Origin: Haplodiscus bocki
Lineage: Eukaryota
Reading direction: 5' to 3'
Length of the DNA: 64,000 bases
NCBI GenBank assembly: GCA_965655095.1
Contig: OZ296654.1
Location: forward strand, 39,618,001-39,682,000
Part shown: positions 58 to 43,584 of the stretch, piece after piece
Layout of the letters: the number at the start of each line of letters is the position of its first letter
Position numbering within the stretch: the stretch's first letter is position 1
Made by a program: the position numbers and the translations under genes
The notes under the pieces: model-generated
Told to the model about the DNA's origin: nothing
The model's input: the letters and a program-made list of their open reading frames with translations, nothing else
Databases searched by the model: none

Positions 58-688
58 TGTTGCGATCACAAATTTTGAAAACTCATTTAATGTATTTTGC
101 CCACACTACGCTAACCCCTATTACCACTTTTCCCACCCGCAGCGTGTTCATCTTCATATGGTGCACTAGTTATACCATAAGGAATTGATTTAGCAAAAAA
201 AGCAGTGTCTGTCTGGTTTTTGAAATTGACCTGTCACTGGATGCGCTAATTTGCAAGACCCCGCTTTAACCCCTGTCTGACAGTGAAAAAGCACCACAAT
301 TGCTCTATAGTTTTTCATAAAATGTTCAAATCGCCCACTCATTATATAGAGGTCATTCAATTGCCATATTGGACACCTTGTTCATTTATTTTATTGGTAA
401 ATCTCTATTTGTGTGTTGAATAAATTTCATGAATACCAGAGAGTTTGTTATAACTATATTAACCACGCCTATTACATTCCAAATTCATATTCCTGACTTA
501 TTTGGAAGTATAGCCTCAATGAGCTGTTGGTTCTTTGTTTATGCAGTGTAAATTTGATCGATAGTAGCATTTCCTGCTTAAAATTGATCAGAACAAGAAA
601 TTGGTTGAACAAAATACAGTCCTTTGAATCAGGTCAATTTTGACGAACCAGGCTGCCCAAACTCGCAAGGAAGAGAGCGGCAGTAACA
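58..688 (+). repeat. 5' LTR core of BEL/Pao element
   Basis: Direct repeat of 7088-7717 with TG...CA ends. Confidence 0.93.
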
Positions 689-1088
689 CACATGAAGACA
701 CAAATATTGCATAACACACTAGAGCTAGCGTTAAGTATGACTCTTGGGAAGACGCAAGCGTTGAGTGAATGATTTTCTTTCTATATTATTGACACCGATG
801 GAAAATAAAAAAAATTTGACGTCACGAAGCCTCAGGTGACGTCCCAAAATAATTGATTCAACTAAAAATTGAACAAGAAATGAGTGGTCTATTCTCAGTA
901 CGTCACAATTAATCACAAGAGGTGTCCCGGGCAACTCAAACAAATACACCAATTTGAAAGTACACGTCGCTGTACCTCTTATGCTGAAATTGCTGCACAA
1001 GCGAAATGGAAACTTCCACCATATGATAAAAAATTGATCAGTGATTATCTATTTTGAATTCCAGAGTAAGAAATTTGTAGTGTCAAGA
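689..1088 (+). repeat. Duplicate of the element's 3' flank (7718-8125), inserted between LTR end and PBS
   Basis: Near-identical to 7718-8125. Bracketed by the 18-bp direct repeat AAGAGAGCGGCAGTAACA (671-688 and 1085-1102). Confidence 0.9.
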
Positions 1089-1104
1089 GAGCGGCAGTAA
1101 CAAT

Positions 1105-1122
1105 TGATCCACCGACCCGGAC
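1105..1122 (+). promoter_or_regulatory. Primer binding site (tRNA-Tyr-like, TGG mutated to TGA)
   Basis: TGATCCACCGACCCGGAC, 2 nt after the repeated LTR end at 1102. Resembles the TGGTCCTTCGAGCCGGA PBS common in BEL/Pao elements. Confidence 0.6.
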
Positions 1123-1153
1123 ACTGGGCATATCTAACGTTGGATTTTGAACA

Positions 1154-3230
1154 ATGTTCAAAAGAAAGTCAGGCGACAAAGGGGATTCCAAGCAGCCGAA
1201 GCTGGAGTCTAGAATCCGACGAGGGGTGGGTGCAAAAGTTGCAGAATTTGAAAACGTGATAACGGCTAGTGACCGATTTGTTCAAGAAAGACTGAAGAGC
1301 ATCAATGCAAGCATTGACAAGCTACGTCAAGAAAAGTTCCTTCTGGATATGGACATGAAGTCTACTGTGACCAGAGCGTCATCATTTAAACTGAGGCTGA
1401 AGCAATATCTTGAATTGGAAGAAAAGGTTACTGGACAGTTACTTCTTTGTGAACAGAAAGCCTCTTCAATGGAATGGATTGCTGATTCAAGGGAGGCTCG
1501 AAAGCACCTCGAAGAGAGAAGTGCCAAACTCCTTGACCTATGGGATCGCAAAATGAAAAAGGCTAAAGTAACAGAAAGGGTCTCATTTGCGACGCAACAA
1601 ACAGTTTTGGTTTCTTCATCCAATGAGAAAGATGAAAAGTCTTAAAATGATGAATAGCAGAGCCAATCTTCATCAGGGTCGTCTTCAGTTAGCGCTCAAG
1701 CATCACCCAACGCTGAGACAACCTCATTAGAAAAGGAAATTGCTAGGGGAGTTACACAGAACAAAGAAATATTGAGAGAGAATAAAGAATTGAAGGAATT
1801 TAAACGCTTGGCTAAAGAACCGCGCAAATTGGAAGTTGCCGGTGAACAAGAGGAAAAAAATCCAGCAAAGCCAGACGGATGGAAAAAATACAGATGAGGA
1901 TTGAGTTGAAGAGACAGGAAATCAACCTTGAGCGTGACCGCTGGATGCGCAAAGCGGAAAAAGAAATGAAGCAATTGGAGGAAGAAGACCGGTTGCCCAT
2001 TTTGAAAGCCAAAAATGACAGTGACTCCTCTGAAAATTTCTTTGATTCAGAAACTGAGAACCCAGATTGCCATCAAGTTGATATTAAAGACAAGAAGGTC
2101 ACGGAAGACTTTTCTTCAGAAGACAGTTTCAGCATGCTCGATGTTCATCCCGATAACGACGAAACATTGGGTGAAAAAAAGTTTAATGAGACTTATCCTT
2201 TCCTTTTTGTGACTAAACTGTGCAAAATTCTGCCACTACACGTGAAAGGCCACGTGTTGATAACCCTGATAAGCTATTCAACTTACAATCTTCAACGCCA
2301 AAACTAAAAGCTAATCGAAACCCCAAAACGATTACAAAAACATCGGGAAACTCTTCACATGGCAAACAAGCAGCCTCTACGCTGACCAGAACTTTACCTA
2401 AACTCAAGTTGAAAGAGTTTGATGGAGATCCACTTGAATGGCTTGAGTGGAGCGGTATGTTTCTATCAACAATCCATCGATGCGCAATCTCAGATGACGA
2501 AAAAATGACACATCTAAAGACGTTGTTGACTGGGCCGGCAAAGAGAGCTTTCATGGGCATGGGCTATTCCGGAGTGATGCACGATACGGCTTGGCAAACA
2601 TTGCAACGCAAATTTGGGCAACCCCACTTGATTGTATCAACGCAGCTAAGTAAAATTCAAAATCATCCTTAATTGAAACCGTACGATAGCGAGTCTTTCA
2701 TCCATTTTGTGGAAACAGTTTCCAATTTTGTAAATGTGCTGCAACAGTTTGGGTACAGTTAGGATTTATTTTCATCAAGCATTTTAGAAGTAATGGTAAA
2801 CAAGTTGCCATCCGACATCAAGCGACGTTGGTTTGCATTTGTTGAGGCTCCAACGCGACGATCAAACGGATGAAGATGTATTCTTTTAAAGCTAACTTTG
2901 ATAAACATCACTTTAAAGGCAAAGTTTCTAGAAACGATAATACCAAAGGATCGACAAATTTCAGTGCCAGTTACAATAATCAGATCGAGATAAGCAAATG
3001 CTATCTTGGTGACGGGGATCAACCTTTATGAAAATGCGAGAAATTCAAAGCTCTAACCTTTCAACAGCGATTTGACAAGTTGAAAGAATTAGATATTTGC
3101 TTCAGTTGTCTCAATGGGAAACATATAATTCGTGACTGGAAAAATTTGAGAAAATGTAACTTTGATGGGTGTAAAATGGAGCACAATAGACTTTTACACA
3201 TTCCAGAAGGTACAAAAAATGACATTGTTT
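1154..3230 (+). pseudogene. gag: BEL/Pao gag (coiled-coil N-terminus, DUF1759-like capsid region, Cys/His knuckles), disrupted
   Basis: ORF fragments 1154-1645, 1879-2307 and 2220-2672 (LPKLKLKEFDGDPLEWLEW...KMTHLKTLLTGPAK), then CFSCLNGKH...KCNFDGCKMEHNRLLH from 3080. Separated by stops and frameshifts. Confidence 0.85.
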
Positions 3231-6200
3231 CGGATAGTAATCAAACGAACCTAGCAAACGACGGTTCGTTCACAGTGCAAGGCCTGCTTCAGATTGCACC
3301 CGTGAGAATATATGCTGCACGAGATAAATATTTTGATACTTTCGCCGTTTGTGACTCTGCCTCTTCACAAACGTGGATGGACGAAGATTTGATGCGATCG
3401 TTATGCATAGAAGGAACTCCAGGCACAATTTCAGTTTCCGGAATTCACGGAACATCTCCGATCACGTGTTTGACAACAAAAATTCAGATTGGACCATCAA
3501 ATGGGAACATGAATGATTGCATAAACGTTACAGCAAGTAGTCATAAAAGTTTGTTAGTTGGAACATCAGTATACAACATAAATGACTTGAAAGTCAAATA
3601 TCCGCATTTGTCGTGTATCAAGCAGAAACAACTTGATTTACGCGCTGTAAAAATGATATTTGGTCAGGATGCTTATCCACTAATTCGACCATTGGAGTAG
3701 AAGCACAGTGGAAGTTATTCTCCTTCGGCAGTAAAGGTTCCCTTGGGATGGACAATCAGTGGACCATTGCTGTCAACTGAAAAATCCCAGAGTATTTTTT
3801 TGTCGTTCAATAGTCAACAAGATTAGGATTTAGCTGTTGCTGTCAGAGAATGGTGGGAAATTGAGTCATATGGGACAACAATTCAAGCAAGTCAAAAATC
3901 GCGCGAAGAAGAACGATCGTTGAATATTCTTCAGGCTACGATAATCAAAAAGGAGGACAGTTACGAAGTCAGCATGTTAATCAATGGCAACCAAGAGAAG
4001 CTAGAGAACAATTTTAATCCAGCTCTTGGTCAATTACGTTCACTGGAAAAAAGATTGGACAAAGATCCGGATTTAAAGATCAGATACCAATCCACTCTAA
4101 CAATTGATCAAAAAAAGGGTTATATCTCTGAGTTATCAGTAGAAAAGTTGGAAAGGCAAGATGTGTGGTACCTTCCACATCATCCAGTAGTTAATCCAAA
4201 GAAGCCGGAAAAAGTTCGTAGGGTGTGTAACGCTGCAAGAAAGTACAAAGGCTTGTGCCTGAATGACACTTTAATGAAAGGACCAGATCTTCTGAGAAAT
4301 CTACTGGGAATTCTCTTCCAATTCCGAGAAAACAAAATAGCGATTACAGCAGACATTCAGGAAAGGTTTCTCCAAGTTGAAGTACCAAACGATCAAAGGA
4401 GATATTTGCGATTTTTGTGGAGAATTTCTGAAAACCAACTAGTCGCAATGCAGTACAATCGACATATATTTGGTGCAAAATCATCTCCCGCCTGTGCCAA
4501 CTTCAGTCTTCAAGAATGTGCTCGAACTAATGAGCACAAGATTCCTAATGCAGCAAAAAAGGTCCTTGAAAACTTCTATGTCGATGAAATGTTAATATCC
4601 GTTGCAGATAGAGAAACTGCTACGTTATTGGTTACAGATACCATCGAAGTACTAAAAAAAGGTGGTTTCAAATTAACTAAATGGTTCTCAAGTGACATGA
4701 ATTTATTTGAGAACTTGGATATTGTGGCAGCAGACAACAGAAAAAATCCGAAAATTCTGGGGATAGAATGGATATCTGACCAAGATCAGTTGACGATTAG
4801 ACGAAATTTAGAGTTCAGTACTAAAGAGAGTTGGACGCAGAGGCAACTTCTCTCCACGGTTTCTCAAGTGTTCGATCCATTGGGTTTTCTGGCACAATTT
4901 CTAATCAGAGGAAGATTGCTAATGAAGAGATTTTGGCAACTGCAGGGTCAAAAATGGGATGTCGCAATTGCCAGCGATATCAACTGTATATTCAACGATT
5001 GGATAAAGGAACTGATGTCGCATTGGATCATTAAAGTACCCCGATGGTATGCAGGGATTACAAAAGATAATGTCGAATTACATGTCTTTGGAGACGCATC
5101 ATAAGATGCATTTTGTGCAAAGGCCTACAGTGTTGCAACAAAGAAAACTGGTGAACGAATTGTAAGATACATTTTGGGAGAAGCAAGAGTCGCTCCAATA
5201 AAGCACCACACAATACCGAAGCTGGAGTTGATGGCAGCCCTAACTGCAAATAGGTTGAAACATCTCATTATTAGAGAACATTCAATCGAGTTCCAGACAA
5301 AATTCGTATGGAGTGAATCAACAAGTGTTTTGCAATGGCTTCAAAACAGCGACAACAAACAACCTACGTTCGTTGCGAATAGACTGGCTGAAATACTGGA
5401 CACTTCTACTGTAGATGAATGGCGACTTATCTCAGGTGAAAACAACCCAGCAGATCTTGGAACACGCGGATTAATTATCGAACAGCTTCAACACAGTGTT
5501 TGGCTTCACGGTCCCGAAGGGCTAATGCAACCCGTCAATGAACCTGAACCATGGTAGAAGGAATTAATCGCAATTGAGCCTGAAGAAGCTTTCATTCAAA
5601 CAACAAATTTTGCTGATGCGAAACAACTCATACAGTGGAAGCGATTTAGTCAATTTAGAAGGTTACGGAACATGATTGCTAGAGTTTTGTGCTGGAGAAA
5701 AATGGATTCGAATTTTTCAGCAGAAATTCTCAGATTGGCAGAATCTAAAATTTGGATGTTAATTCAAAAGGAGCTTTTTCCTAATGGATGGAAAGACCTT
5801 TCAAAAACAATGGAAGTGCCCAACAACAGCCCAATTAGAATTTTGAGTCCTTTTATGACAGACAATGTCATAAAAGCAAGGGGACGTTTGCGTAAGGCAA
5901 AATTAAGTTTCACGTGGAAGCATCCAATGCTGCTGACTGGCAAGCATCCCACTGTTAAGCTTTACTTGCAGTTCATGCATAATACACACCATCACCAAGG
6001 TGTGGAATACTTGCGAAGCGTGATTCAAAAGGAATATCGGATTTGGGCGCTGAGAAACTCGCTCAGAGCTATCAAGTACAATTGAATTCATTGTAAAGTT
6101 TGAAGTTCAAAAGGGGTGACCACTATGATGTCCGACCTCCCCAGCTACAGTGTTCGTGATAATGTTACACCGTTTAGTACCACTAGAATAGATTATTTTG

Positions 6201-7050
6201 AGCCATTTGTTGTGAAAATGTTTAGAAAGACAGTGAAGAGATGGATATGCTTGTTCACCTGCTTAAGTGTTCGAGCAGTACATCTAGACGTTGTTCACTC
6301 ATTGGACACACAGTCTTGTCTAGATGCCATTTATCGATTCACTGCCCGTCGAGGCAAGCCACGTTCGATATTTTCAGACAACTGGACAATTTTCGTTGGA
6401 GTTGCAAATCAACTACGGAAAGCATTTGAGTTATTGTACGAGTCACAAATGAACGAAACGCTGGCTATCGAAGGAGTAGATTGGCAATCCAACCCTGCTG
6501 GGGCGCCGCAATTTGGTGGAGCATGGGAATCATTGGTAAAGTCCACCAAAAGAGCGATGTTCAATGTATTGGGCAAGGAAGAAAAATTAAACACTATCGT
6601 TTGTTTAACTGAACAACAGCTCAACCGACCCTTAACTCCAGTAAGCGTGAATATAGATGACCTGCACACCATTACGCCGAGTCTTTTTCTGATTGCAGGA
6701 CCAAACTATTACTGGCCTCAGTGGCTAATGAGCGATAAAAATGTATCATATCGCAAAATGTTCAGAACGGTTACTGAGCAATTGAAACACTCTTGGAAAC
6801 GATGGATGACTGAATGTCTACCAACGTTACAACAGCGGAAGAAACGGTATTCGAGTGGAAATTCAGTCATCAAGGAAGGGGATTTAGTGTGGATTGTTGA
6901 CGAAAGAGATTCGTATTTCATTTACTCTCTAGGAAGAATCCAAGCTATTCACCGAGGAGATGATCAAGTGATACGATCAACGACAATCGAAACATTGAAA
7001 GGAATCTTCAAGAGACCTATTATTAAACTAATACCCTTAGAACTTGATCG
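3231..7050 (+). pseudogene. pol: BEL/Pao pol: aspartic protease, RT, RNase H, integrase; multiple premature stops
   Basis: Protease AVCDSASSQT. RT in 3920-5104 (ADIQERFLQV, FGAKSSP, NFYVDE replacing YVDD). RNase H in 5174-5557. Integrase Zn region in 5672-6085. Integrase core in 6116-7050 (IDYFEPF, FTCLSVRAVHLD, SDN, GGAWE). Confidence 0.92.
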
Positions 7051-7087
7051 CAGTAATTTATGTTGGGACCCAAAATGGGGCCGGCTA

Positions 7088-7717
7088 TGTTGCGATCACA
7101 AATTTGGAAACTCACTTAACGCATTTTGCCCACACTGGACTAACCCCTATTACCACTTTTCCCACCCGCAGCGTGTTCATCTTCATATGGTGCACTAGTT
7201 ATACCATAAGGAATTGATTTAGCAAAAAAAGCAGTGTCTGTCTGGTTTTTGAAATTGACCTGTCACTGGATGCGCTAATTTGCAAGACCCCGCTTTAACC
7301 CCTGTCTGACAGTGAAAAAGCACCACAATTGCTCTATAGTTTTTCATAAAATGTTCAAATCGCCCACTCATTATATAGAGGTCATTCAATTGCCATATTG
7401 GACACCTTGTTCATTTATTTTATTGGTAAATCTCTATTTGTGTGTTGAATAAATTTCATGAATACCAGAGAGTTTGTTATAACTATATTAACCACGCCTA
7501 TTACATTCCAAATTCATATTCCTGACTTATTTGGAAGTATAGCCTCAATGAGCTGTTGGTTCTTTGTTTATGCAGTGTAAATTTGATCGATAGTAGCATT
7601 TCCTGCTTAAAATTGATCAGAACAAGAAATTGGTTGAACAAAATACAGTCCTTTGAATTAGGTCAATTTTGACGAACCAGGCTGCCCAAACTCGCAAGGA
7701 AGAGAGCGGCAGTAACA
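7088..7717 (+). repeat. 3' LTR of BEL/Pao element
   Basis: Preceded by the BEL-type PPT GGGGCCGGCTA (7077-7087) and followed by TSD CACAT. Confidence 0.93.
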
Positions 7718-10700
7718 CACATGAAGACACAAATATTGCATAACACACTAGAGCTAGCGTTAAGTATGACTCTTGGGAAGACGCAAGCGTTGAGTGAATG
7801 ATTTTCTTTCTATATTATTGACACCGATGGAAAATAAAAAAAAATTTGACGTCACGAAGCCTCAAGTGACGTCCCAAAATAATTGATTCAACTTTCAACT
7901 AAAAATTGAACAAGAAATGAGTGGTCTATTCTCAGTACGTCACAATTAATCACAAGAGGTGTCCCGGGCAACTCAAACATATACACCATTTTGAAAGTAC
8001 ACGTCGCTGTACCTCTTATGCTGAGATTGCTGCACAAGCGAAATGGAAACTTCCACCATATGATAAAAAATTGATCAGTGATTATCTATTTTGAATTCCA
8101 GAGTAAGAAATTTGTAGTGTCAAGACACATCGCATGCCAAAAATTCTGCTGAGCATATTTGCTTTGCAGTTGAAAGCTTCACTTTTGAGACGTCACGTCA
8201 ATTGGTGAATATTTTCATACCTCATTTCCTGAAGATGTTCCATCACACCTCACCTCAAGTGAAGGACAAACGACACAGCCGCTAAGCGTCTGTTAACAGC
8301 AAAAACATAAACCTGCCTACCACTAAATGTCAGTTAACGACACCTGAGCTTAAGTACTGTAAATAACTATTTTAATAGCTTGTATTGAAACATAATTTAT
8401 GTGACCATTCTGCATATACATTAAAACAGTTTAAGATTGTATTTTTGATTTACATCACGTAGGAGTTTTTATAACCCTGACCTGCCAGTGAGTCTCAAGC
8501 CCTAGTAGCAGCAACTTTTGATGCTTCATCTGATGATTTAAACGTGTAATTCGCCTTCCCAACATTCAACTCTAGCTCAAACACAAGATACATAACTTCT
8601 ACGCATTAAACATATAAGTTTTGGTTATTCAATAATTCTGATATGCATTCTATCAGAAATAACGTTGCTTTACATCATTAATTTCAGTTAAATTTTCCCC
8701 TGTGAAACTAATTCAATCACTAAACATTATCCAACGAATTAAATGTTAACCTAGATTGTGTTTTCTTCTCACAGTCCCTGAAGTTAAGGAACGTCAAGGC
8801 AGTTATTTGCAAAAATCCAAATCGCAAGACAAAAATGGTTCAACAAAACAAACCTGTTAGCACTGAGAAACGACGAAGCCAAGGAGATGAGTATCCTTGC
8901 CGTTCAGCACCAAACTCGCAAACTGACGTACAAGCGCTAGAGGAATAATTTATTATGTTGCTGGAAACTCGTGTGAACACCAGAACGAAAGAGTCAGAGA
9001 ATAAGTTTGACAAGTTATCTGGTTTCGTACAATGTCTGGTGGAAAGCCGAATAGAGAATTCTCCATCGGCATTGTTCAACCACCTAGGAGGTCCAACATT
9101 GTTGAATTGACAATTTAATCTAAGCCCATTGTCTACTTCGAAAATTGTATCTTCTTGCCGTAGAATCCCAGAACAAAATCGGAAACCTCGATGACTTCAT
9201 GTAGAAAGATTTCCAGTTTTTGTAAATTTTAGGTAATTGCAATGGACGGTATAGGAACATTGTTACAGCTGTTTAAAACATTTGCCCATTTCTTTTCGAA
9301 AGTCAAATTCCAACTGTCAAATTCATTATTGAAGAAGCATCCGAGTCTCCTTAGGTGAATTTACGATTTTCCTGCAATATTAACCACTACCTAAATTTGG
9401 AAGTCGAATCAATTAATGTTTTATCTTTGTTCATTAAATAAGGCATAAGACTATCCTCGAGAGATTTTTTCTGATAAATAAATCTCTTCATATACATTTC
9501 TATGCTGGGAGATTACAAAGGTTTCCGAAAACAAGGTGATTGGTTTTTCTTTTACGACTATATTTCAGTTTATAGCAAAATCTTCAATCCAGTAGTCTGC
9601 TTCTTTTTCAAAAAAGTATAGCGCGGCATTCTGCCATTCCAGTAGACTGATTTCTTGATCTACCACAATGCTTAATTCCAAAGTTTACTGATGAAAGACA
9701 ATGAGAGCCGATCACATGCAATATTTCAGTACAACGGTTCGGGTTCGATCCCCACAATGACCAAATTTTTCAACACCTGTCTCGCGTTTGTTTCAATTTC
9801 TTCAATTTTTTCAAGACAAAGTTTTATTTTCTCATGATTAAAGTTTGAAATTTTTGTAGCACTACGGAATTTTTGCCCGTTTCATTGTATTTGCAGAAAT
9901 GTGTACAGTTTGCTAAACTTTCGATATCAAAAAAATTTAAGTTTATTTCATGGTTTTTGGGTAAGTTCTTCTAATTCTTGCAATAGTTCTCCTTTTTTCG
10001 AGAAAAACTGAAAAAAAAACGGAAAATGTGGGAGACAGCCAAAAAAATATGCAGGGTAAGTTGCCGAAAATGGCGAATGTTAGAGTGAAGCATAGTAGAG
10101 AGACTAAGATAATGGCGTTAAAAAAGAAGACTGAATAGACTGGCAGATAATCGAACAATAAATGGAATTATCGCCTTTTCTTGTACTTTTGGCAGAAAAA
10201 ATACAATTTAAAAGTGAAGCCAAAAACCTGCATTATAGGTTGGCACAAAAGTGGCGAATATTGGAGTTGCGGATAATCGAGGTATAAACCGTTCCAATAC
10301 GAAATTTCTGGCATATGCAGAGGGTGCATCATGAAAGTTCCCAAAGTTTGGCTCTAGAAGTTTCTCCCAAATGCAATCCTCCGCAGTTTGCTATGATCTC
10401 TTACTTTTTCATTGAAAACTTTCTGATCACACTTTCTCACTACTGCTTCACGTTTTCCCATTTTTTTCAATGTTTTTGGCAGGCGTAGTCGCAAAATATC
10501 GAAGTGCTACTGTGTCTCTTGTTTATTGCCTACCTCTTGAAATAATCTGAAGTGTGTGACGTTAACTTGGTGTACACTTAAATGTTTTCTCAGATTGCTT
10601 TAAGTGAGAAAATAACTTTTAACTTTTCGTTTTTTTTTTGTTTTTGAGACCTGTTTCAAAAAGGGATACATTTCGAATTACTCCTTTTAAATCTAATTCC

Positions 10701-12241: not shown

Positions 12242-13068
12242 GTTAGTAAACTAGTTATCACCAGGATTTCTAACAACAAATTTTTCTGGAATTCAAATGG
12301 AGAGGACATGTTTTGAGAACAAAATGAATAATTGAAATGGGTGTTGGAATTGGAAGTTTACTTAAAGTTCAAACTTTCAATTTTTGAATTTTCTACATGA
12401 ACTTTAAAAATTTCATTCCTGTTTGGAAACTGAAATTAAAGTGCATGATATCCCTAGCAGATGTCAAACAAGACAACTGGCTACCTCAGGCATATTTTCC
12501 GCCCTCCAACTTTTACGGAGATGTTTTTTAGAAGGTTAAAAGCGTTTTTTCTGATACATACTCTTTCTTCAGCAAAACTTCTAGGTTTTCCAAATTTAAA
12601 AAAAAATCATTTTTTCCAAAAAAACTCAATTTATGTGGTAAAAAATTATTTTTGAGAAATTTTATCATTTTGTACTAATTCTACATTAAATCTGCTACTG
12701 TGGCACGTGGTAGGGGTATTGGTATTGCAAATCTCTTATTTACTTGTTTGTGCTGGCGGCTGACTCAGTCAGCACTAATATGCTATAGCGACGGTTATTT
12801 TTTATAAGTCTCAATAGAGTGCCTTGCTTAACGTGCGAACAAAGGGATTGCGTGAATTCAAGCAAGGACTTGTGAGCTATAAAGATATAGAGAATACAAA
12901 AGAAAATTTAAATTGTAAACAGTGACAATTCAAAATGTTAAACCGTGAAGGAAATATTACTGCGCGTATGGGAAAGGGGAATTACTCATATGGTCTTTTA
13001 AGTTAGAATCTGGCATTGGTCGTGTTGATGTTGGCTGTTGTTGATTACTGCTGATTGCTGATGGCTGC

Positions 13069-13185
13069 TGCTGGTTGCTGGATGGTTGCTAACTGCGGCT
13101 TGGATACGGCTGGTTGCTGGATGATTGCTGATTGCGGCTGGGATACGGCTGGTTGCTGGACGATTGCTGATTGCGGCTGGGATAC
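13069..13185. repeat. 3 x 39-bp tandem repeat in LTR (also ~17603-17719)
   Basis: Unit GGCTGGTTGCTGGATGATTGCTGATTGCGGCTGGGATAC. Confidence 0.9.
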
Positions 13186-13208
13186 TGCTTGCAGGCGGAA
13201 AAATCTTT

Positions 13209-13512
13209 GAATATTTTCGAAGAGGCGATGAAGGAATTTGGCTAAGACACAGTTTGAAATTGTCTTAGAATATTTTCAATAAGATGCGATTGGAATTTGG
13301 CTAACACACAACTTGAAATTGTCTCAGAATATTTTCGAAGAGATGCGATTGGAATTTGGCTAAGACACAATTTGGAATTGTCTTAGAATATTTTCGAAGA
13401 GATGCGATCGGAATTTGGCTGAGACAGAATTTGGAATTGTCTTAGAGTTTTTTCAATGAGAAGCGTTTGGAATTTGGTAAAGACATTATTTAAAAACGTC
13501 TTAGAAAATTTT
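13209..13512. repeat. 5 x 59-bp tandem repeat in LTR (also ~17743-18046)
   Basis: Unit GAATATTTTCGAAGAGATGCGATTGGAATTTGGCTAAGACACAATTTGGAATTGTCTTA, containing an internal TAAGACA...TGTCTTA inverted repeat. Confidence 0.9.
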
Positions 13513-15956
13513 CAGAGCAAGAATAAAGCTTTAGGAATATAATGAAGGGAAAGTGGAAGAGAGTTTCGCCTCGGGGAAATAGGCCCATTTGACGGTAGGA
13601 AAGGGAATGAAGAGAATGAGAGAGTACGGGGTGTTTTAACTCTGTTATATAGCAATCGAGTAATTGACCAATAGGAGAGCGCCACAAATAGCAATATCAA
13701 CGAAGATTATCCAGTCGGTAGAAACAGCTTGAAATTTGGAAAAGGGACGGTTTCTGCATATTTAATCCGTAACTCGGAATTTAGAATAAATTCTAAAGAC
13801 CACGGTAGCAGACGAGGTGAGAATGATCTATGAGTAACGTCAATTCTCTTTGCCTAAGAACCTCGTGGGGGGTCGTACAGTTTAAGATCCACTCATGCTT
13901 CAGAACCGAAGTTCATCCACGGAATCAGCACACGCTATTACCGAAGCTAGCGTTAGTGGACACCGTTTATACTCCGATGGCAAGAGTATAGAATTTGTAG
14001 AAGGAAAGAGGAAATTTTTCTAAGTCAGAATGAAAATGGGACTTGGAATATTTTTGTCCGAAGAGAAGCAGGAAGAGAATTTAGAATAAATTTAACCAAG
14101 CAAGAATGGAAAGAAAATAACGTTAAAAGGAAAGGGAGTAAAGTAAAAGGGAAGAGGAGAGTAATGTAAAGTAAAAGGGAAAGAAGTAAGGCTGCCGTCC
14201 GGTAAGCGAGTAAGGCAGTAATATTCAAGCCGCTTTCCTCTACCAGCTACAAAATGTAGCTAACGCGCGCGTGTCTTTATTTTGTGCGTTGAACCACATT
14301 TCAACGCGTTTAGAATTTTTCCTTTTCTTTCCTTTTACCTTTGTTTAAGCGTTAGCTATAACGCGACAACTTACCGGGGTTAAAGGGATAGAAAAATGAT
14401 TGGGGGGTGCTAGGGAAAAGTGAACGGGATGAGTGGGTAGAGTTTGGCAAAGCAACAATTCTAGAGAGTTTAAAATCCTGATTGAGGAAGAGCAGTGACA
14501 GCTTGTAGGGGAACCACATTTCACTCGAGTAGGCAAAACGTTTTCTGAACATGCTGGTCGTTTCGTCAGTTGTCCCGAAAGATAATTTCCCATGAAGCGA
14601 AGTCGAAAATTAAGCCATCGTGGAGGCGGGAGTTCAGCTGTGATCTGCTAATTGTTCTCGTTTTGTTCGTCAGCCGAGGCTGGGTTAGAAAAGTACGTCG
14701 TACTAGAAGTTGAATGTGAAGGATATATTACGTCTGGGATAATGAGGACAGCTGGCCAAGACCCAATAATCTTCTAGCTGCAATCAAGATGTTTACTGTA
14801 AGCTTTGTGTAACCTAACTTTCATCTGCAATCAGGTTAGCGGGAGAAAAGAAAAATAGCTTACTTCGCCACCGGATTCCCAAGTGGAAAAGGTCTCTCTA
14901 TTCTGCCAGAGGAATAGCTATGGACGAATGCCGTAATATCAAACCGGCGCTCTGTGGGCACTAAGACAGAGTAGGAGCTAAAATTTTAAAGTAGTAGCTC
15001 CACTACTATTAAAACGACGCCCAGATTTTTTTAGAGGACGCTGGATCGAACCCAGTATCGTCAAAAAAGTGCCAAATGAAATTTGCTTCTTCCGTAATTA
15101 GTATCAAAGTTATTAGAGTCTGTCAGCCTATTTTCAGGCCGTTTGTTATGCTTGTTTGAGAGTAATGTCGTCTGGAAGACCTCGTCAGGCTCAATTCCTT
15201 TTGGTCTGCTAGTGAAGTTTCAACAAGTAAGAGAAGTGTGGGCCCTTCAGTTATTATCCGGAAAGAAGACGAATAGATTATTTCAGAAAAATTGATTTAG
15301 GGGATCCATGAAAGTAATTTCGAAATTGTTCCAGGCTTGTAAGCATGAAGAACAACTGTCTCAAATTTAGTTATTGAATCGTGGGTGGGATGCTAATCAG
15401 TGACACCTCGTGAAATACCCCAAGGTCTCGATCCTAAATCCAGAAGATCGTCTAGGCTTTGGTTTTCCCATTTGTCCATTTTTCGGAGATTACTAGGGTC
15501 ACAAAGAGGCTGGCGAACCCTTCTGTTTAGGCTGTTTTGGGTTGAACATTGCAGCGAGTAGATTCTCAGCAATCCCGATCTTGACTTTGAAGAAATGTTT
15601 TCGTCAGAATTTTAAAAGTTTGATACAGGTTTTCCAAAAGTTTTCCTTGTTTATATGCTCCCGTTGGAGTTGCTTGTTTTCCATTTGCAGCGAAGAGTTA
15701 ATTTTGGTTGGTTTTTGGTGTGGCTAGGGCATTATGATCGATTTCCTTGCGGGTCAAGAATTCCAGGTAATTAATTGCGTGGATAATCCTTGCTGAGAAG
15801 ATTTCTGTATGCATGTCTGATGCCGGTTATTTGGATTAGAAGAATAGATGTTGGATTAGACGTAAGCAATGAAGAAGGTGCAATCAACTATAGTTAAGTT
15901 ACAAAAAGTTTGAAGGGGGTAAAAAAAAAGAAAATATAAAAGAGATTTTGGAGGCT

Positions 15957-17126
15957 TCAGAAACCTAACGGATGTGAGTCCGACGATTCACCGTCAGACT
16001 CGCCGATTGATATAGCTTCTGCCTTATTGAAGCTCATGCCATTGTTCCTTGGAAAGAGTCTTCGTTCGGGAGGAGTAAACTGTTCATCTTCATGTTGCCA
16101 ATTTGCATCCTCGTTAGATAGCCGTTCGATCGATGGGCTGTTTCTATCGTCCAGATCAAGAAAATCGTTCATGGCCTCATGGTTTGGTGGTTTACGGTTG
16201 AATTGGTCAGTGGAAGAGTTCTTCATGAGACTGATAATCCTTTTAGATGACATATCATTGCGTATTTTGCGTACTTCTTCATCTCGCATCTTTTTGCGAC
16301 ACCAATTTAGTGTATGTCCATTTTAATGGCAGTAATTACAGAATCGGGTAGTTTTTTGTCTTCCCTGTTGATTGGGATGAAAAGTTCGTGAAGTTACTGC
16401 TACGGCATTGACGTGATATTCTTTCAACTCTGATCGAAGGTTTTTTATCTCCTGTCCAAGTGTTGCCAATTCTGCTTTGGTTTGTGTTTCATGGGATAGA
16501 AAGGTCGAAGATACTTCTAGTATCAAATCTTTCTGAATTATATGAGCCCAGAAATCGTTCCACGTGGCGTTTGGACGCTCCATTAGATATTCTTGAGCTT
16601 TCCGTTGCAGATATCTAGGTCTAAGTCCTCGCAAACTGTAGTCCATGTACCTTGGTCTCCTTTGTCCGCCTTGTGCTGCCCGTTCCGCATTTTGTTGAGC
16701 GGCCTCAATACCGTTTAAATCATCGGGCCATCTTTTATCAACCGTTCGTTTGATACGGTGTAAAAAATTCCGAATTTCTTCTCCATCTCCTCTAATACAA
16801 TGTTCCACTTCCATGCGGTATCGGAATTTGTTTCGTCCATCTGAAAATCTAGTGATGAAATTTGTTCGAACATTCTCCCATGTTGCTGCGTTGCTAATAT
16901 TGCTCTCGTACCACTCAGCGGCTGGTCCTCGGAGTAAAGAGGAAAAGAGCGCTTTCTTCCTGAAAGTGTAATTTGCCAGTTCACCAGCATCTGCAGGTGC
17001 GTCTCCAAGAGCAAAGTTGATTTTTCGTTCGATTAGTTGGATGAAAGATTCGGCATCTTGATCGGGGTCCGTGCCAGAAAATTTGTCCATCGCCAGGTCG
17101 TGATAGGCGAGATGAGCAGCAGCCAT
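15957..17126 (-). pseudogene. gag: Ty3/gypsy gag (capsid plus CCHC nucleocapsid) with one in-frame TAA
   Basis: MAAAHLAYHDLAMDKFSGTD...LRGPAAEWY...W..VRTNFITRF...RGDGEEIRNFLHRIK. Knuckle CNYCH*NGHTLNWC; the frame continues into ORF 15957-16289. Confidence 0.88.
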
Positions 17127-17211
17127 TGTAATAATTATCAGAACAACATAACCCATACAAATACAGCTCCAGCAAAAACGGATTTTAGTTAAAAGGGTTG
17201 CTCACTGTTGG

Positions 17212-17229
17212 GCCTCACTGGTCGCACCA
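17212..17229 (-). promoter_or_regulatory. Primer binding site of gag-only element 1
   Basis: Minus strand TGGTGCGACCAGTGAGGC, 3 nt from the LTR. The TGGTGC-N5-GTGAGG pattern matches the 3' ends of elongator tRNA-Met or tRNA-Ile(UAU). Confidence 0.7.
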
Positions 17230-17232
17230 GTT

Positions 17233-18902
17233 TGTGGCACGTGGTAGGGGTATTGGTATAGCAAATCTCTTATTTACTTGTTTGTGCTGGCGGCTGACTC
17301 AGTCAGCACTAATATGCTATAGCGACAGTTATTTTTTATAAGTCTCAATAGAGTACCTTGCTTAACGTGCGAACAAAGGGATTGCGTGAATTCAAGCAAG
17401 GACTTGTGAGCTATAAAGATATAGAGAATACAAAAGAAAATTTAAATTGTAAACAGTGACAATTCAAAATGTTAAACCGTGAAGGAAATATTACTGCGCG
17501 TATGGGAAAGGGGAATTACTCATATGGTCTTTTAAGTTAGAATCTGGCATTGGTCGTGTTGATGTTGGCTGTTGTTGATTACTGCTGATTGCTGATGGCT
17601 GCTGCTGGTTGCTGGATGGTTGCTAACTGCGGCTTGGATACGGCTGGTTGCTGGATGATTGCTGATTGCGGCTGGGATACGGCTGGTTGCTGGACGATTG
17701 CTGATTGCGGCTGGGATACTGCTTGCAGGCGGAAAAATCTTTGAATATTTTCGAAGAGGCGATGAAGGAATTTGGCTAAGACACAGTTTGAAATTGTCTT
17801 AGAATATTTTCAATAAGATGCGATTGGAATTTGGCTAACACACAACTTGAAATTGTCTCAGAATATTTTCGAAGAGATGCGATTGGAATTTGGCTAAGAC
17901 ACAATTTGGAATTGTCTTAGAATATTTTCGAAGAGATGCGATCGGAATTTGGCTGAGACAGAATTTGGAATTGTCTTAGAATTTTTTCAATGAGAAGCGT
18001 TTGGAATTTGGTAAAGACATTATTTAAAAACGTCTTAGAAAATTTTCAGAGCAAGAATAAAGCTTTAGGAATATAATGAAGGGAAAGTGGAAGAGAGTTT
18101 CGCCTCGGGGAAATAGGCCCATTTGACGGTAGGAAAGGGAATGAAGAGAATGAGAGAGTACGGGGTATTTTTACTCTGTTATATAGCAATCGAGTAATTG
18201 ACCAATAGGAGAGCGCCACAAATAGCAATGTCAACGAAGATTATCTAGTCGGTAGAAATAGCTTGAAATTTGGAAAAGGGACGGTTTCTGCATATTTAAT
18301 CCGTAACTCGGAATTTAGAATAAATTCTAAAGACCACGGTAGCAGACGAGGTGAGAATGATCTATGAGTAACGTCAATTCTCTTTGCCTAAGAACCTCGT
18401 GGGGGGTCGTACAGTTTAAGATCCACTCATGCTTCAGAACCGAAGTTCATCCACGGAATCAGCACACGCTATTACCGAAGCTAGCGTTAGTGGACACCGT
18501 TTATACTCCGATGGCAAGAGTATAGAATTTGTAGAAGGAAAGAGGAAATTTTTCTAAGTCAGAATGAAAATGGGACTTGGAATATTTTTGTCCGAAGAGA
18601 AGCAGGAAGAGAATTTAGAATAAATTTAACCAAGCAAGAATGGAAAGAAAATAACGTTAAAAGGAAAGGGAGTAAAGTAAAAGGGAAGAGGAGAGTAATG
18701 TAAAGTAAAAGGGAAAGAAGTAAGGCTGCCGTCCGGTAAGCGAGTAAGGCAGTAATATTCAAGCCGCTTTCCTCTACCAGCTACAAAATGTAGCTAACGC
18801 GCGCGTGTCTTTATTTTGTGCGTTGAACCACATTTCAACGCGTTTAGAATTTTTCCTTTTCTTTCCTTTTACCTTTGTTTAAGCGTTAGCTATAACGCGA
18901 CA
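17233..18902 (-). repeat. 5' LTR of gag-only element 1
   Basis: Direct repeat of 12699-14368, adjacent to the PBS on the minus strand. Confidence 0.95.
17308..17340 (-). promoter_or_regulatory. Putative LTR core promoter (TATA plus Inr)
   Basis: Minus strand TATAAAAA (17340-17333) about 30 nt upstream of Inr-like TTAGT (17312-17308). Implies ~1.59 kb U3 and a very short R/U5. Confidence 0.45.
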
Positions 18903-20899
18903 CTACCTTTAATGGTTCTGGAAAAAGTCATTTTTAAAAAAAAGAACCCGACGTTTTTCTCCAAAAATCCCAAATTTCGTACCTTTTAGGAATTCTTACT
19001 TTTTCAGTCGCATTCTGCTGCAAATTTGCTATAATTTTGTGATAAAAAGTTTTCAAATTCAGAATCGGACATTTCGGTTGGACAATATCTATTGGCAACT
19101 AAACGTAAAAAAACGTCCCCGTTGATTGGATAATCTTCCTTCCATATTATAAACATGGGCGAAAAATATTGAAAATAAAGATCGACGAGGAGTCCATTCA
19201 CTTAATTTCGCGAAGTAACAAGCATCAGGACCCCCATTAGTTTCTTTTCAAATCAAGTTGTAAAACTGTAGATCAAAAATTGCCCTGAGTTGATGAATAA
19301 TAAAAATTTTCCATTAGCAGAATGATCAAGGCACATTTTGTTACAAATATGAAAAAAAGAGGTGCCGCAGCGCTGCAATATTTTCCGTCGACGAAGTATT
19401 TGAACGAAGTATCTGCACTTTACCTAAATGCGGCCTTGCAAACAGCAGGAATTTTTGCAATTTTTGAACTATGAGTCTCCCAATACAAGGAACAAAACCT
19501 AAAGAACCTAAAGTGGTGACTTTTTTGGAAAAGAGTTTTCGGAAGACGCAATCATGAAAACAATTTCAGGGGACAGTTCTAGAGTGAAAAACATTTGATT
19601 TTGGAAGAAATCTTAAAGTGTGCAGTTTTTGATTTTTGCCGCCTACCAGAGTTCAAAAGGAATCGAACAAACTTAAGATTTTACTGTTTAATGATTTTTT
19701 ACACCCAGAGCGCGGTCTACTGAGACCATGATCCAGCGGATAATTTCAGCAATAAGTTGAGTGAGAAAGTCAGAAATAACGAATACTTAGGCACCTTTTG
19801 GGCCCTTCAGCCTATCACGACACTGATGTCTTTAAAAAAGCTGATATTTTAACGCGGAACACTTTTTAACATGTAGAAAACTGTAGATTGATGCAAGAAC
19901 GGAAAAAATCACGCCGCAGTTTCGGAGAAAACGAAAGTTGAATGTCAACAAACTTCATTACCAACCACATTATTGGCATTTTCGGCATACCAAGGCTCGA
20001 AGGAGGCAAAAAGGCATTACATGTCTCCAGAAAATATAGCAGCTGGCTGTCGATTTTTGTTTCCGTGGAAGAAGTTCAACTCGCAGTGTATGGAAAAAAT
20101 GGTTTGAACTTTGTGAAGGATTCTTAGAAATTGCACTTGTTGATGGTTTCGAACAATCAAAAAACCGCTTCTTACAAAAACACTAGAAAAATTTCTTGAT
20201 TCACTTTCCGCACCTACAAAAATGACGATTCAGAATTTGATCAAAGATAACCAGTCAGTTGATGTGCTTAAGTCAAACTGGATGTTAAAACCTAGAAATG
20301 TTGAAACTTCTGGCATTTTTTGACTTCCTCTGTCCCTGAGAAGTCCAATGCAGTGATGACCAACCCTGAGTTTGGTGTTGGATGCCCTTGCGAAAAGTCA
20401 AAAGTGTCGATTAAGATGTTGATTGAGGAAATCAAGCTGATAGATAAAGTTATAGGCAAAAATCACTCCGAAAATCGAGAAAAGTCAATGCTCATAAAAA
20501 ATCTTTACCAGGTTGGCCAATCAAGATTCCCCTAGAACATCCAAAATCTGACAAACTTGTGTTGAAAGCCAAAGGACAAAAAAGAAACCTTTCCTTCAGG
20601 CCTTCAATGAAGAAATCAGTCCGGTACTTCAGAAAGGAAGTGAAACTGAATATCCAAAAAAAAACATTTTCCAATGGAACTTCTTGGCATTTCCATTTCC
20701 TCAGAATTCGGAAATAAAGACTATTAACCAAAAAATACCACTGAAAGCTCTTCCAAAAGACATTAATTATCGATTAAGACCTTGATAAGAGAAAGCAAGC
20801 CCGCAGTTTGCAAAATTTTCAGCTTGAATACAAAGAAAACCTAATAATAAAGAATTTTTTTTCACTTCAGTTTCTGAGAAAAATTATCCATCTAATATA

Positions 20900-34512: not shown

Positions 34513-34761
34513 ATTGACTGCCGTCTGTTTTCCGATCCAGTACCCGCAATTTTTCTCAGTACGGAATGTGCGTCGGCTGATCTGTGGCTCCGTGCTCTAC
34601 TCAGCATCCACTGGAATGACGTTTGGCATGCTCTGTTTCTACTACCACGCCACCTTCACGAGCTGGCAGTACGAGGAGTCTTTCTGGATGATGATCAACA
34701 AAATCGCCACTCTGCATGTCATGGGACTGTACACAATGGCCATCTTCGGAATCGTCATAAG
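34513..34761 (+). CDS. GPCR coding exon 3 (ICL2, TM4, TM5)
   Basis: Acceptor CTTTTCAG, phase 2 matching. Translates (R)LTAVCFPIQYPQFFSVRNVRRLICGSVLYSAST...TLHVMGLYTMAIFGIVI. Donor AG|GTCACT. Confidence 0.85.
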
Positions 34762-38700: not shown

Positions 38701-38843
38701 TGCTCCGCCAATCCCCCGTCTCGTGGATCTGGTACACGTGTTTAAAGGAGTAGTAGTGGAGCAATTTAAAAACAGACTAGAAAAACTCTCAGTGATTCGA
38801 TTCTTCTTTGGCGATTGTTAAAGCTACTTTTCAAAAATCTACA
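35717..38843 (+). repeat. 5' LTR of gag-only element 2
   Basis: Direct repeat of 40438-43584. Confidence 0.95.
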
Positions 38844-38844
38844 G

Positions 38845-38864
38845 TGGCGCTCCTGGATGGGCTC
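38845..38864 (+). promoter_or_regulatory. Primer binding site, tRNA-Asn-like
   Basis: TGGCGCTCCTGGATGGGCTC 1 nt after the LTR. Close to the metazoan tRNA-Asn complement TGGCGTCCCTGGGTGGGCTC. Confidence 0.75.
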
Positions 38865-38958
38865 ATCTCTGTTTTGATTTATTCTTCTACCCTTTAAGTC
38901 AAAATTTCTTGTTTTCCCAGTTATTCCCCTTCCTGTTATTCTCTGGTTCTTTTACCCG

Positions 38959-43400: not shown

Positions 43401-43584
43401 TAGACTTTTCTTTTCTTTCGGAGTTATAAATTTTTTGTGGATGCTCCGCCGATCCCCCGTCTCGTGGATCTGGTACACGTGTTTAAAGGTGTAGTAGTGG
43501 AGCAATTTAAAAAGAGATTAGAAAAACTCCCAGTGATTCGATTCTTCTTTGGCGATTGTTGAAGCCACTTTTCAAAATTCTACA
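40438..43584 (+). repeat. 3' LTR of gag-only element 2
   Basis: Preceded by PPT (40425-40437) and followed by TSD AATAA. Confidence 0.95.

What the first reader, a model, noticed from the sequence alone, without database searches (positions are those of the whole stretch)
12699..18902. Young gag-only LTR retroelement (TR-GAG-like) in an animal genome
Seen: near-identical 1670-bp LTRs, perfect TSD, tRNA-type PBS and gag starting ~85 nt after the PBS. Gag is followed by ~1.6 kb of non-coding sequence with no recognisable PR/RT/RH/IN remnant. Established: TR-GAG elements (LTRs plus gag only) are described mainly from plants. Inference: a non-autonomous family that supplies its own capsid and borrows Pol in trans. 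Together with the unrelated gag-only element at 35717-43584, this suggests a recurrent capsid-only satellite retroelement strategy in this genome, the best candidate here for an undescribed system.
Basis: partly seen in the sequence, partly recalled or inferred. Interest (0 to 1): 0.72.

Follow-up and report, generated by a model that had tools for sequence, protein, structure and literature searches.

The report
Capsid-only satellite LTR retroelement family
This is a recently inserted copy of a multi-copy LTR retroelement family in an unidentified animal genome. The family keeps only the capsid (gag) gene of an envelope-carrying gypsy-type element, and most likely spreads by borrowing that relative's enzymes. 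The kind is known (from plants) but poorly documented in animals.

Summary
Two 1670-bp LTRs (12699-14368 and 17233-18902; 9 mismatches, no indels) are flanked by a perfect 4-bp duplication (CTAC). The element lies on the minus strand, with a TGG-type primer-binding site and a 399-codon gag. The gag has one in-frame stop inside its zinc knuckle.

The 1.6-kb tail has no PR/RT/RNase H/IN remnant. It is not anonymous, though. It is collinear with non-pol parts of a 20-kb autonomous Ty3/gypsy relative (gag-PR-RT-RH-IN-env) found in ENA assembly ERZ26859043.

Eight further copies at seven other loci share the same pol-less interior; of the four with both flanks readable, three have distinct perfect 4-bp duplications. 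All 52 sampled gag proteins of this type form one clade. Their gag is under purifying selection (median dN/dS 0.33).

The primer-binding site, LTR tips, a 315-bp LTR segment, the last 60 nt and a roughly 220-nt non-coding block upstream of the env start are conserved with the relative. Synonymous sites between the two lineages are saturated (dS above 1).

The second gag-only element (35717-43584) is also a multi-copy pol-less family.

Verdict: a real, long-lived, TR-GAG-like non-autonomous family. It is a new member of a known kind, not a new system. Trans-mobilisation is inferred, not shown.

The parts
12695..12698 (.). Target-site duplication, left copy (CTAC)
   Evidence: identical 4 bp directly flank both LTR outer ends.
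12699..14368 (-). 3' LTR (element orientation), 1670 bp
   Evidence: 99.46% identical to 17233-18902, with no indels and TG..CA ends.
13049..13514 (-). Tandem arrays inside the 3' LTR (39-bp unit x3.6 at 13049-13189; 59-bp unit x5.3 at 13204-13514). The same arrays lie in the 5' LTR at 17583-18048.
   Evidence: The repeat number varies among copies, and related repeats are present in the autonomous relative's LTR.
13742..14056 (-). 315-bp LTR segment conserved with the autonomous relative (78-90% identity). The 5' LTR copy is at 18276-18590.
   Evidence: It is much more conserved than gag synonymous sites (dS above 1).
14369..14429 (-). Last 61 nt of the interior, with a short purine stretch (GGTAAG) abutting the 3' LTR; weak polypurine-tract region
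   Evidence: aligns to the 61 nt before the relative's 3' LTR (70%). The relative has GAGCGGGGTGAG here.
14485..14670 (-). Pseudogenised remnant of the C-terminus of a 205-aa ORF that follows env in the autonomous relative
   Evidence: tblastn E 5e-11, 42% over 62 aa; the same in-frame stops are shared by the other copies.
14822..14865 (-). Splice-acceptor-like tract (pyrimidine run, CTAAC, ..TTGCAG ending at 14825) followed by an ATG at 14824-14822. This ATG lies within a few columns of the relative's env start codon in the alignment; only a short ORF follows here.
   Evidence: The role as an acceptor is inferred from sequence only.
14866..15090 (-). Conserved non-coding block: 93-96% identical among gag-only copies and about 84% in its 140-column core to the autonomous relative, where it sits just upstream of env
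   Evidence: Flanking tail sequence is only 81-88% identical among copies and cannot be aligned to the relative.
15388..15649 (-). Segment homologous to the IN-env spacer of the autonomous relative (70-74% identity)
14369..15956 (-). Whole non-coding tail between the gag stop and the 3' LTR; no PR/RT/RH/IN remnant
   Evidence: tblastn with the relative's proteins; Pfam on pieces; no Rfam family.
15957..17156 (-). gag, 399 codons including its native stop. The Retrotrans_gag match is at 16737-16949 and the CCHC knuckle at 16299-16340.
   Evidence: Intact 399-aa versions occur in L001, L005, L006 and L007, and a 398-aa one in L008.
16323..16325 (-). In-frame TAA that breaks gag of this copy inside the zinc knuckle
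   Evidence: The stop count of the gag region in the other copies shows three intact copies and two with a 1-bp frameshift, none with this stop.
17211..17232 (-). AAC spacer plus the 19-nt primer-binding site (TGG...)
   Evidence: identical 22/22 in the autonomous relative and in five of the six other loci scanned; L007 differs by one mismatch.
17233..18902 (-). 5' LTR, 1670 bp
18903..18906 (.). Target-site duplication, right copy (CTAC)

Best explanation
The element is one young insertion of a long-lived, multi-copy, non-autonomous Ty3/gypsy-derived family. The family arose once from an envelope-carrying (errantivirus-like) ancestor. It lost PR-RT-RNase H-IN, env and most of the post-env region, and kept gag plus a small set of cis-acting modules.

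Shown here:
- the structure of the element;
- the family, with several independent insertions;
- a single clade of its gag proteins;
- purifying selection on gag;
- conserved modules shared with an autonomous relative.

Inferred mechanism:
- Family members are transcribed from the LTR.
- Intact copies translate their own Gag, which packages the family RNA.
- Pol (protease, reverse transcriptase, integrase) comes from Gag-Pol of an autonomous relative that co-assembles with this Gag.
- The shared primer-binding site, LTR tips and polypurine-proximal end let the borrowed RT and IN act on the RNA.
- The conserved pre-env block is a further cis signal of unknown role (packaging, export or splicing control).

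The window copy itself has a truncated gag. It was either mobilised entirely in trans or mutated after insertion.
For: Structure.

Same pol-less interior in other copies. It is present in L001 (two tandem units), L004, L005, L006, L007 and L008, at 85-89% nucleotide identity and collinear through every junction. Distinct perfect duplications are AATG, ATTT and CTAG, against GTAG here in element orientation. No pol lies within +/-8 kb of the two deepest copies.

Abundance. There are 1188 gag homologues, many of exactly 399 aa. One 90%-identity cluster holds 277 distinct sequences.

Single clade. All 52 short-tail gag proteins form one clade, support 1.0, with no long-tail protein inside.

Selection. 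Pairwise dN/dS is 0.25-0.61, median 0.33. Three disjoint pairs have bootstrap upper limits of 0.39, 0.46 and 0.47. Codons 1-299 give 0.23 and the tail 0.61. CCHC is kept in 15 of 16 short-type proteins matched.

Autonomous relative (L002/L003, L011). It has gag 479 aa, PR, RT-RH, IN and an env matching PF24664, with 2.4-2.6-kb LTRs and TSD TGTG. Its spacer plus primer-binding site is identical 22/22. Its LTR tips are nearly identical, and its polypurine-proximal end is homologous. The map is collinear.

Conservation of the shared modules. gag dS between the lineages is 1.1-1.4. Even so, the pre-env block core is 84% identical and a 315-bp LTR segment 78-90%.

Age. The LTR pair of this copy is the most similar of those measured: 99.46% against 96.7-98.4%.
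Against: - No expression, particle or mobility data exist; trans-complementation is inference.
- The only autonomous relative found is distant (75% Gag identity, dS above 1). Both sampled copies of it have pol split into several ORFs, so a working helper has not been demonstrated.
- A closer helper with a fused Gag-Pol would have been invisible to the length-limited protein search.
- The polypurine tract is weak.
- This copy's gag is broken. Two of the seven gag copies first compared carry a 1-bp frameshift.
- Only nine copies, including this one, were inspected at DNA level. All the others come from one assembly (ERZ26859043), whose species is unknown and may not be that of the window.
- The tree was midpoint-rooted and covers only the best hits.
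- RNA-structure support for the conserved block is weak: z-scores -1.55 and -0.57, and 3 compensatory pairs among 48.
Confidence: 0.8

Rival explanations
1. A one-off deletion: this is an ordinary autonomous gypsy copy that lost pol after it inserted.
For: Internal deletions of LTR elements are common (general knowledge). The tail is made of collinear remnants of a full-length relative.
Against: Eight further copies at seven other loci carry the same junctions, and three of them have their own perfect target-site duplications. The copies differ by up to dS 0.28 in gag, so the deletion predates much diversification.
Confidence: 0.02
2. Passive hitch-hiker: the family is mobilised wholly in trans, like a LARD. 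Its gag ORF is irrelevant to its spread, and the apparent constraint comes from gene conversion or recombination with autonomous elements.
For: The window copy was inserted recently yet has a broken gag. Some copies carry frameshifts. A 315-bp LTR segment of L001 is as close to the relative as to other gag-only copies, which could mean sequence exchange.
Against: gag dN/dS is 0.25-0.61 among copies that all share the deletion, with bootstrap limits below 0.5. The short-tail gag proteins form a clade well separated from the autonomous type (dS above 1), so conversion from that lineage cannot explain the pattern. The non-coding tail next to gag evolves faster (81-88% identity) than gag (93-95%).
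Confidence: 0.1
3. Interfering element: the family's Gag mainly poisons or competes with particles of the autonomous relative (a defective-interfering or restriction-like role). This could benefit the host. It is not exclusive with parasitic spread.
For: Gag is 75% identical to the relative's over 299 residues, close enough to co-assemble. Gag-derived restriction factors are known in mammals (own knowledge: Fv1, enJS56A1).
Against: Hundreds of dispersed copies with LTRs and target-site duplications are the signature of a transposing parasite, not of a host gene. No single conserved syntenic locus was seen. Interference was not tested.
Confidence: 0.08
4. Amplification by DNA-level duplication (tandem or segmental) rather than by retrotransposition.
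For: LTR-interior-LTR-interior-LTR tandems occur in L001, and for the second family in L009.
Against: The window copy and three other copies have different flanks and different perfect 4-bp duplications; a fourth (L008) has an imperfect one. The tandems are the usual product of unequal recombination between LTRs and account for one extra unit each.
Confidence: 0.02

Closest known systems
TR-GAG elements of plants (Chaparro et al. 2015, PMC4350172)
   Same: LTRs, primer-binding site and target-site duplication. A single ORF encoding Gag and no PR/RT/RH/IN. At least two copies per genome. Presumed mobilisation in trans.
   Different: The host is an animal. The element is 6.2 kb, against the operational limit of under 4 kb, because the LTRs are 1.67 kb. 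The duplication is 4 bp, not 5. The polypurine tract is poor. A related autonomous element was found here, whereas none was found for TR-GAG1. The ancestor carried env, and the element keeps a conserved pre-env block.
LARD and TRIM non-autonomous LTR retrotransposons
   Same: They depend on an autonomous partner and retain LTRs, primer-binding site and 3' end (PMC4350172; PMC3286476).
   Different: LARDs and TRIMs have no coding capacity. This family keeps a selected gag.
BARE-2 of barley
   Same: A two-component parasite-of-a-parasite arrangement with an autonomous partner (PMC4350172).
   Different: The opposite deficit: BARE-2 lacks functional Gag and borrows it, whereas this family keeps Gag and lacks Pol.
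Envelope-carrying Ty3/gypsy elements (errantivirus-like) of metazoans (PMC13524379)
   Same: The autonomous relative has the gag-pol-env order, a tRNA-type primer-binding site, LTRs and many similar copies.
   Different: That paper classifies env as paramyxovirus-F-like or herpes-gB-like. Here env matches Pfam PF24664 (Monjiviricetes_fusion), and I did not place it in that scheme. The paper does not mention non-autonomous or gag-only derivatives (0 occurrences).
Mouse ETn/MusD and IAP I-delta-1 deletion derivatives (own knowledge, not checked here)
   Same: Deleted endogenous retrovirus derivatives that outnumber and are mobilised by full-length relatives.
   Different: ETn has no gag ORF. I-delta-1 makes a Gag-Pol fusion. 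Neither is a clean gag-only lineage with long-term selection on gag.

Membership tests
LTR retrotransposon (structural definition) | Two direct long terminal repeats with TG..CA ends | tested here: met
   1670 bp, 99.46% identical, TG..CA ends.
LTR retrotransposon (structural definition) | Short target-site duplication | tested here: met
   CTAC on both sides. Three other copies have their own perfect 4-bp duplications.
LTR retrotransposon (structural definition) | tRNA-complementary primer-binding site next to the 5' LTR | tested here: inconclusive
   A TGG-starting 19-mer lies 3 nt after the LTR and is conserved 22/22 (with the spacer) in the relative. The matching tRNA was not found.
LTR retrotransposon (structural definition) | Polypurine tract next to the 3' LTR | tested here: inconclusive
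   Only GGTAAG/GGTGAG is present. The relative has GAGCGGGGTGAG at the homologous place.
Ty3/gypsy (Metaviridae) lineage | Gag of the Retrotrans_gag type with a CCHC knuckle | tested here: met
   (PF03732, 26.9 bits against a cut-off of 24.1). (the knuckle, interrupted in this copy). (the knuckle matches dArc1 and Ty3). The fold search was only suggestive (Arc lobes, E 0.4 or worse).
Ty3/gypsy (Metaviridae) lineage | pol with domain order PR-RT-RH-IN | tested here: not met
   Absent from this element. Present in that order in the autonomous relative, which places the family by descent.
TR-GAG (PMC4350172) | Similarity to Gag only; none to PR, RT, RNase H or IN | tested here: met
TR-GAG (PMC4350172) | At least two copies in the genome | tested here: met
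   (copies in ENA assembly ERZ26859043). Only one copy lies in the window itself.
TR-GAG (PMC4350172) | Total length at most 4 kb | tested here: not met
   6204 bp; the interior is 2864 bp. This is an operational filter of that study, not a biological property.
TR-GAG (PMC4350172) | Plant host | tested here: not met
   The window carries a BEL/Pao element (restricted to animals, own knowledge) and a GPCR-like exon. The relative's env is of an animal-virus type. The species is unknown.
Non-autonomous element mobilised in trans | Demonstrated dependence on a partner's Pol | not testable with these tools
   Only shared cis signals and co-occurrence in one assembly were shown.

The most novel reading that the evidence does not exclude
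Capsid-only satellites are a stable, recurrent way of life for LTR retroelements in this animal. At least two unrelated families each keep a selected gag. They also keep only those non-coding modules that the helper's machinery needs.

The modules conserved across saturated divergence are the LTR tips, a 315-bp LTR segment, the primer-binding site, a roughly 220-nt pre-env block and the last 60 nt. Together they would form a natural deletion map of the cis-acting requirements of an envelope-carrying metazoan gypsy element. The pre-env block would be a previously unknown cis signal.
Probability: 0.3. Interest if true: 0.6.

Novelty: new member of a known kind. Interest (0 to 1): 0.4.

Why it matters
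Gag-only non-autonomous LTR elements have been named and studied almost only in plants. All 19 papers found for 'TR-GAG' concern plants, and the metazoan env-gypsy survey does not mention such derivatives.

This case pairs a gag-only family with an identifiable autonomous relative. It shows that gag stayed under selection after pol was lost. It also shows which non-coding pieces survived, giving concrete candidates for cis-acting signals of an animal retrovirus-like element.

It further warns annotators that abundant standalone gag ORFs in invertebrate assemblies can be satellites rather than decayed full-length elements or domesticated genes.

Tried and rejected
- Pol remnant in the tail: tblastn with the relative's PR, RT-RH and IN and Pfam on eight stop-to-stop pieces found nothing.
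- A possible protease-like reading I saw by eye at about 15500-15700 was not supported by either test.
- Rfam: no family in the window at gathering score. In the tail there was only a chance-level NEAT1_2 match (E 0.29).
- RNA structure of the conserved block: MFE z-scores were -1.55 and -0.57, and alifold gave 3 compensatory pairs of 48. This is too weak to claim a structure beyond one invariant hairpin.
- A T-loop-like motif in the block is not a tRNA by ARAGORN.
- Gag fold: the AlphaFold model was poor (pLDDT 53.5). Foldseek put Arc lobes on top but at E 0.4 or worse, so this counts only as a hint.
- Host identity: no names or accessions came with any homologue. The window's gag ORF is not on record. 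There were no tRNA or rRNA genes.
- Primer tRNA: not identifiable, and the supplement of PMC13524379 is not held.
- Whether an intact helper exists: the two copies sampled both have a split pol, and the look-ups were exhausted.
- The large representative search was not used, because at 50% clustering it could not separate near relatives.
- The first treekit run timed out and was replaced by FastTree.
- Handling of the broken gag: it was never read through its stop for a search. The two pieces were searched apart.
- The alignment tools print a majority-consensus line on their own. I did not save or use it.
- N runs were left untouched.
- Nothing suggests human sequence (CpG o/e 0.93, BEL/Pao and gypsy content).

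Full report
OBSERVATION

The window holds two direct repeats of exactly 1670 bp, at 12699-14368 and 17233-18902. They differ at 9 positions, with no indel (99.46%). They begin TG and end CA, and are flanked on both outer sides by CTAC.

The coding strand is the minus strand, so 17233-18902 is the 5' LTR. Three bases after it lies a TGG-starting 19-mer (17229-17211), a primer-binding site by position and form. An ORF starts at 17156, with a second ATG at 17126. It runs in one frame to 15957, 399 codons in all. It is interrupted by a single TAA at 16325-16323, which falls inside a CX2CX4HX4C knuckle.

The N-terminal piece matches Pfam Retrotrans_gag above the curated cut-off. A profile of the family matches the zinc-knuckle region of dArc1 and Ty3 among solved structures. 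A structure prediction was of low confidence. Its best fold matches, Arc capsid lobes, were not significant. The sequence in front of the 3' LTR is only weakly purine-rich. No other copy lies in the window.

IS THE POL-LESS STATE PRIVATE TO THIS COPY?

No. The 277-aa piece has 1188 homologues in the protein collection, all from ENA assemblies. Many are exactly 399 aa, the uninterrupted length, and one 90%-identity cluster holds 277 distinct sequences.

I fetched the DNA around seven of them, all from assembly ERZ26859043: L001, L004, L005, L006, L007 and L008. Every one is an LTR-interior-LTR unit whose interior aligns to this element end to end, through every junction. Nucleotide identity is 85-89%, with only small indels.

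L004, L005 and L006 have their own perfect 4-bp duplications (AATG, ATTT, CTAG), and L008 an imperfect one. L001 is a tandem LTR-interior-LTR-interior-LTR. No pol is detectable within 8 kb of the two most diverged copies. LTR pairs of those copies are 96.7-98.4% identical, so the window copy is the youngest measured.

In a tree of the N-terminal 295 residues of 115 homologues, all 52 proteins with the short C-terminal tail form one clade. Its support is 1.0, and no long-tail protein sits inside it (midpoint root, best hits only).

SELECTION ON GAG

The seven gag sequences all share the deletion. Among them, Nei-Gojobori dN/dS ranges from 0.25 to 0.61, with a median of 0.33. Synonymous distances reach up to 0.28.

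Three non-overlapping pairs give 0.30, 0.27 and 0.33. Their bootstrap upper limits are 0.46, 0.39 and 0.47. The first 299 codons (capsid plus knuckle) give 0.23, and the acidic tail gives 0.61.

Three of the first six other copies are intact and two carry a 1-bp frameshift. The knuckle cysteines and histidine are kept in 15 of 16 short-type proteins that my pattern matched. Gag therefore stayed functional in the lineage that founds new copies, long after pol was lost.

THE AUTONOMOUS RELATIVE

The next group of homologues (467-479 aa; one cluster of 555 sequences) belongs to a roughly 20-kb element (L002+L003, contig ctg75341).
- LTRs of 2.6 and 2.4 kb, about 98.8% identical over their main alignment.
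- Target-site duplication TGTG.
- gag, a protease ORF, RT-RNase H and integrase.
- Two ORFs that together cover Pfam PF24664 (a viral fusion glycoprotein).
- Two further unnamed ORFs after env.

A second copy (L011) has an uninterrupted 729-aa env. In both copies pol is split into several ORFs. Envelope-carrying gypsy elements are reported to be widespread in invertebrates (PMC13524379).

Gag of the two lineages is 75% identical over 299 residues without gaps. Synonymous sites are saturated (dS 1.1-1.4, dN 0.13-0.15), so this relative is not the immediate parent.

WHAT THE TAIL IS

The 1588-bp tail has no similarity to the relative's PR, RT-RH or IN (best E 0.08). It has no Pfam match in its eight longest sense-strand pieces. 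Instead it is collinear with other parts of the relative:
- 15649-15388 matches the IN-env spacer.
- 15085-14846 matches the 240 nt just upstream of env.
- 14670-14485 matches the C-terminus of the 205-aa ORF behind env (tblastn E 5e-11). In-frame stops there are shared by all copies, so it is a fossil.
- The last 61 nt match the 61 nt before the relative's 3' LTR.

So pol, env and most of the post-env region were removed, and gag kept its own stop.

CONSERVED CIS MODULES

Synonymous sites are saturated between the lineages, yet five non-coding pieces remain recognisable:
- the LTR tips;
- the spacer plus primer-binding site, identical 22/22;
- a 315-bp LTR segment, 78-90% identical;
- the last 61 nt of the interior;
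- a block at about 14866-15090.

Among gag-only copies that block is 93-96% identical, as conserved as the selected part of gag. The tail on either side of it is only 81-88% identical. Its 140-column core is 84% identical to the relative. It occurs nowhere else in the 250 kb I hold.

The block ends at a pyrimidine tract, a CTAAC and TTGCAG. An ATG follows that lies within a few columns of the relative's env start in the alignment. This looks like the env splice acceptor, but that is inference.

Evidence for a defined RNA structure is weak. I therefore regard the block as a functional non-coding element of unknown role. This pattern of retained modules is what one expects of an RNA that must be transcribed, packaged, primed and integrated by someone else's proteins.

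MECHANISM

Shown: a monophyletic, multi-copy, pol-less lineage with a selected gag, and cis modules shared with an autonomous relative in the same assembly.

Inferred: intact members make Gag that packages family RNA. Pol arrives as Gag-Pol of an autonomous relative that co-assembles with it. The shared primer site, LTR tips and 3' end then allow reverse transcription and integration.

The window copy, with its truncated gag, either rode entirely in trans or acquired the stop afterwards. At 0.27% change per LTR since insertion, about three substitutions are expected in gag, so a post-insertion stop is plausible. That last figure is my arithmetic, not a test.

Weak points are listed in the Against line. 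The chief ones are that no intact helper was seen and that no expression or mobility data exist.

THE SECOND ELEMENT

35717-43584 has 3.1-kb LTRs (97%), a 5-bp duplication (AATAA), a TGG primer site and a good polypurine tract. It also has a 255-aa ORF.

The ORF has 311 homologues. Most are 275 aa, and a few are flagged Retrotrans_gag. More distant ones of 409-440 aa carry zf-CCHC. L009 holds a full-length collinear copy (88.9%), again in tandem form. L010, from another assembly (ERZ25074608), holds an autonomous relative with a 1552-aa pol.

HOST

The species was not identified. An animal is indicated by several features:
- a BEL/Pao element at 58-8125;
- a GPCR-like exon;
- the env type;
- a RUNDC1-like exon in L009.

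CpG is not depleted (o/e 0.93). Nothing suggests human sequence.

COMPARISON AND NOVELTY

The element works like a plant TR-GAG (PMC4350172) and meets its biological criteria. It fails that study's 4-kb length filter and its plant host. It is the mirror image of BARE-2.

I file it as a new member of a known kind. The added value is threefold: an animal host, an identified autonomous relative, and the natural map of retained cis modules.

CONDUCT

- I searched the two gag pieces apart and put nothing at the break.
The alignment tools print a consensus line by themselves, and I did not use it.
- I do not say what would restore the ORF.
- One functional assay that would need a working helper element is referred.

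Noticed in passing
window 58-8125: A BEL/Pao LTR retrotransposon with LTRs at 58-1088 and 7088-8125 (98% identical). Its ORFs match Peptidase_A17, RVT_1 and DUF5641.
   Followed up: partly
window 35717-43584: A second, unrelated gag-only LTR element: 3.1-kb LTRs, TSD AATAA and a 255-aa gag-like ORF without a knuckle. It also belongs to a multi-copy pol-less family, with an autonomous relative in another assembly.
   Followed up: partly
L001 5875-17200; L009 4764-16828: Both gag-only families occur as LTR-interior-LTR-interior-LTR tandems, presumably from unequal recombination between LTRs.
   Followed up: no
window 13049-13514 and 17583-18048: 39-bp and 59-bp tandem arrays lie inside the LTR. 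Their copy number differs among family members, and related repeats sit in a different order in the autonomous relative's LTR. They are possible regulatory repeats.
   Followed up: no
window 13742-14056 and 18276-18590: A 315-bp LTR segment is 78-90% identical to the autonomous relative although gag dS exceeds 1. L001's LTR is as close to the relative as to other gag-only copies. The cause is either strong constraint or sequence exchange between the two lineages.
   Followed up: partly
window 13633-13725 / 18167-18259: Five of the nine differences between the two LTRs fall within 93 bp.
   Followed up: no
P0003 cluster (277 sequences): The representative of the largest gag-only cluster lacks the first cysteine of the zinc knuckle, while most other short-type proteins keep CCHC.
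   Followed up: no
L003 12203-13305 (contig ctg75341 18300-19405): The autonomous relative has two further ORFs (205 and 162 aa) after env with no family match. A fossil of the first survives in the gag-only family.
   Followed up: partly
window 34463-34771: An ORF piece next to an N run weakly matches a serpentine GPCR family (Srx, E 2.5e-4, below the cut-off). It may be a host exon.
   Followed up: no
window 63523-63897: A 145-bp tandem repeat, 2.7 copies, 76% matches.
   Followed up: no
window 54001-60000: Strongly negative AT skew (-0.18 to -0.34) over 6 kb, unlike the rest of the window.
   Followed up: no
L009 3592-3876 (minus strand): A called gene fragment matches Pfam RUNDC1, a hint of a host gene of animal type in the assembly that carries both families.
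   Followed up: no
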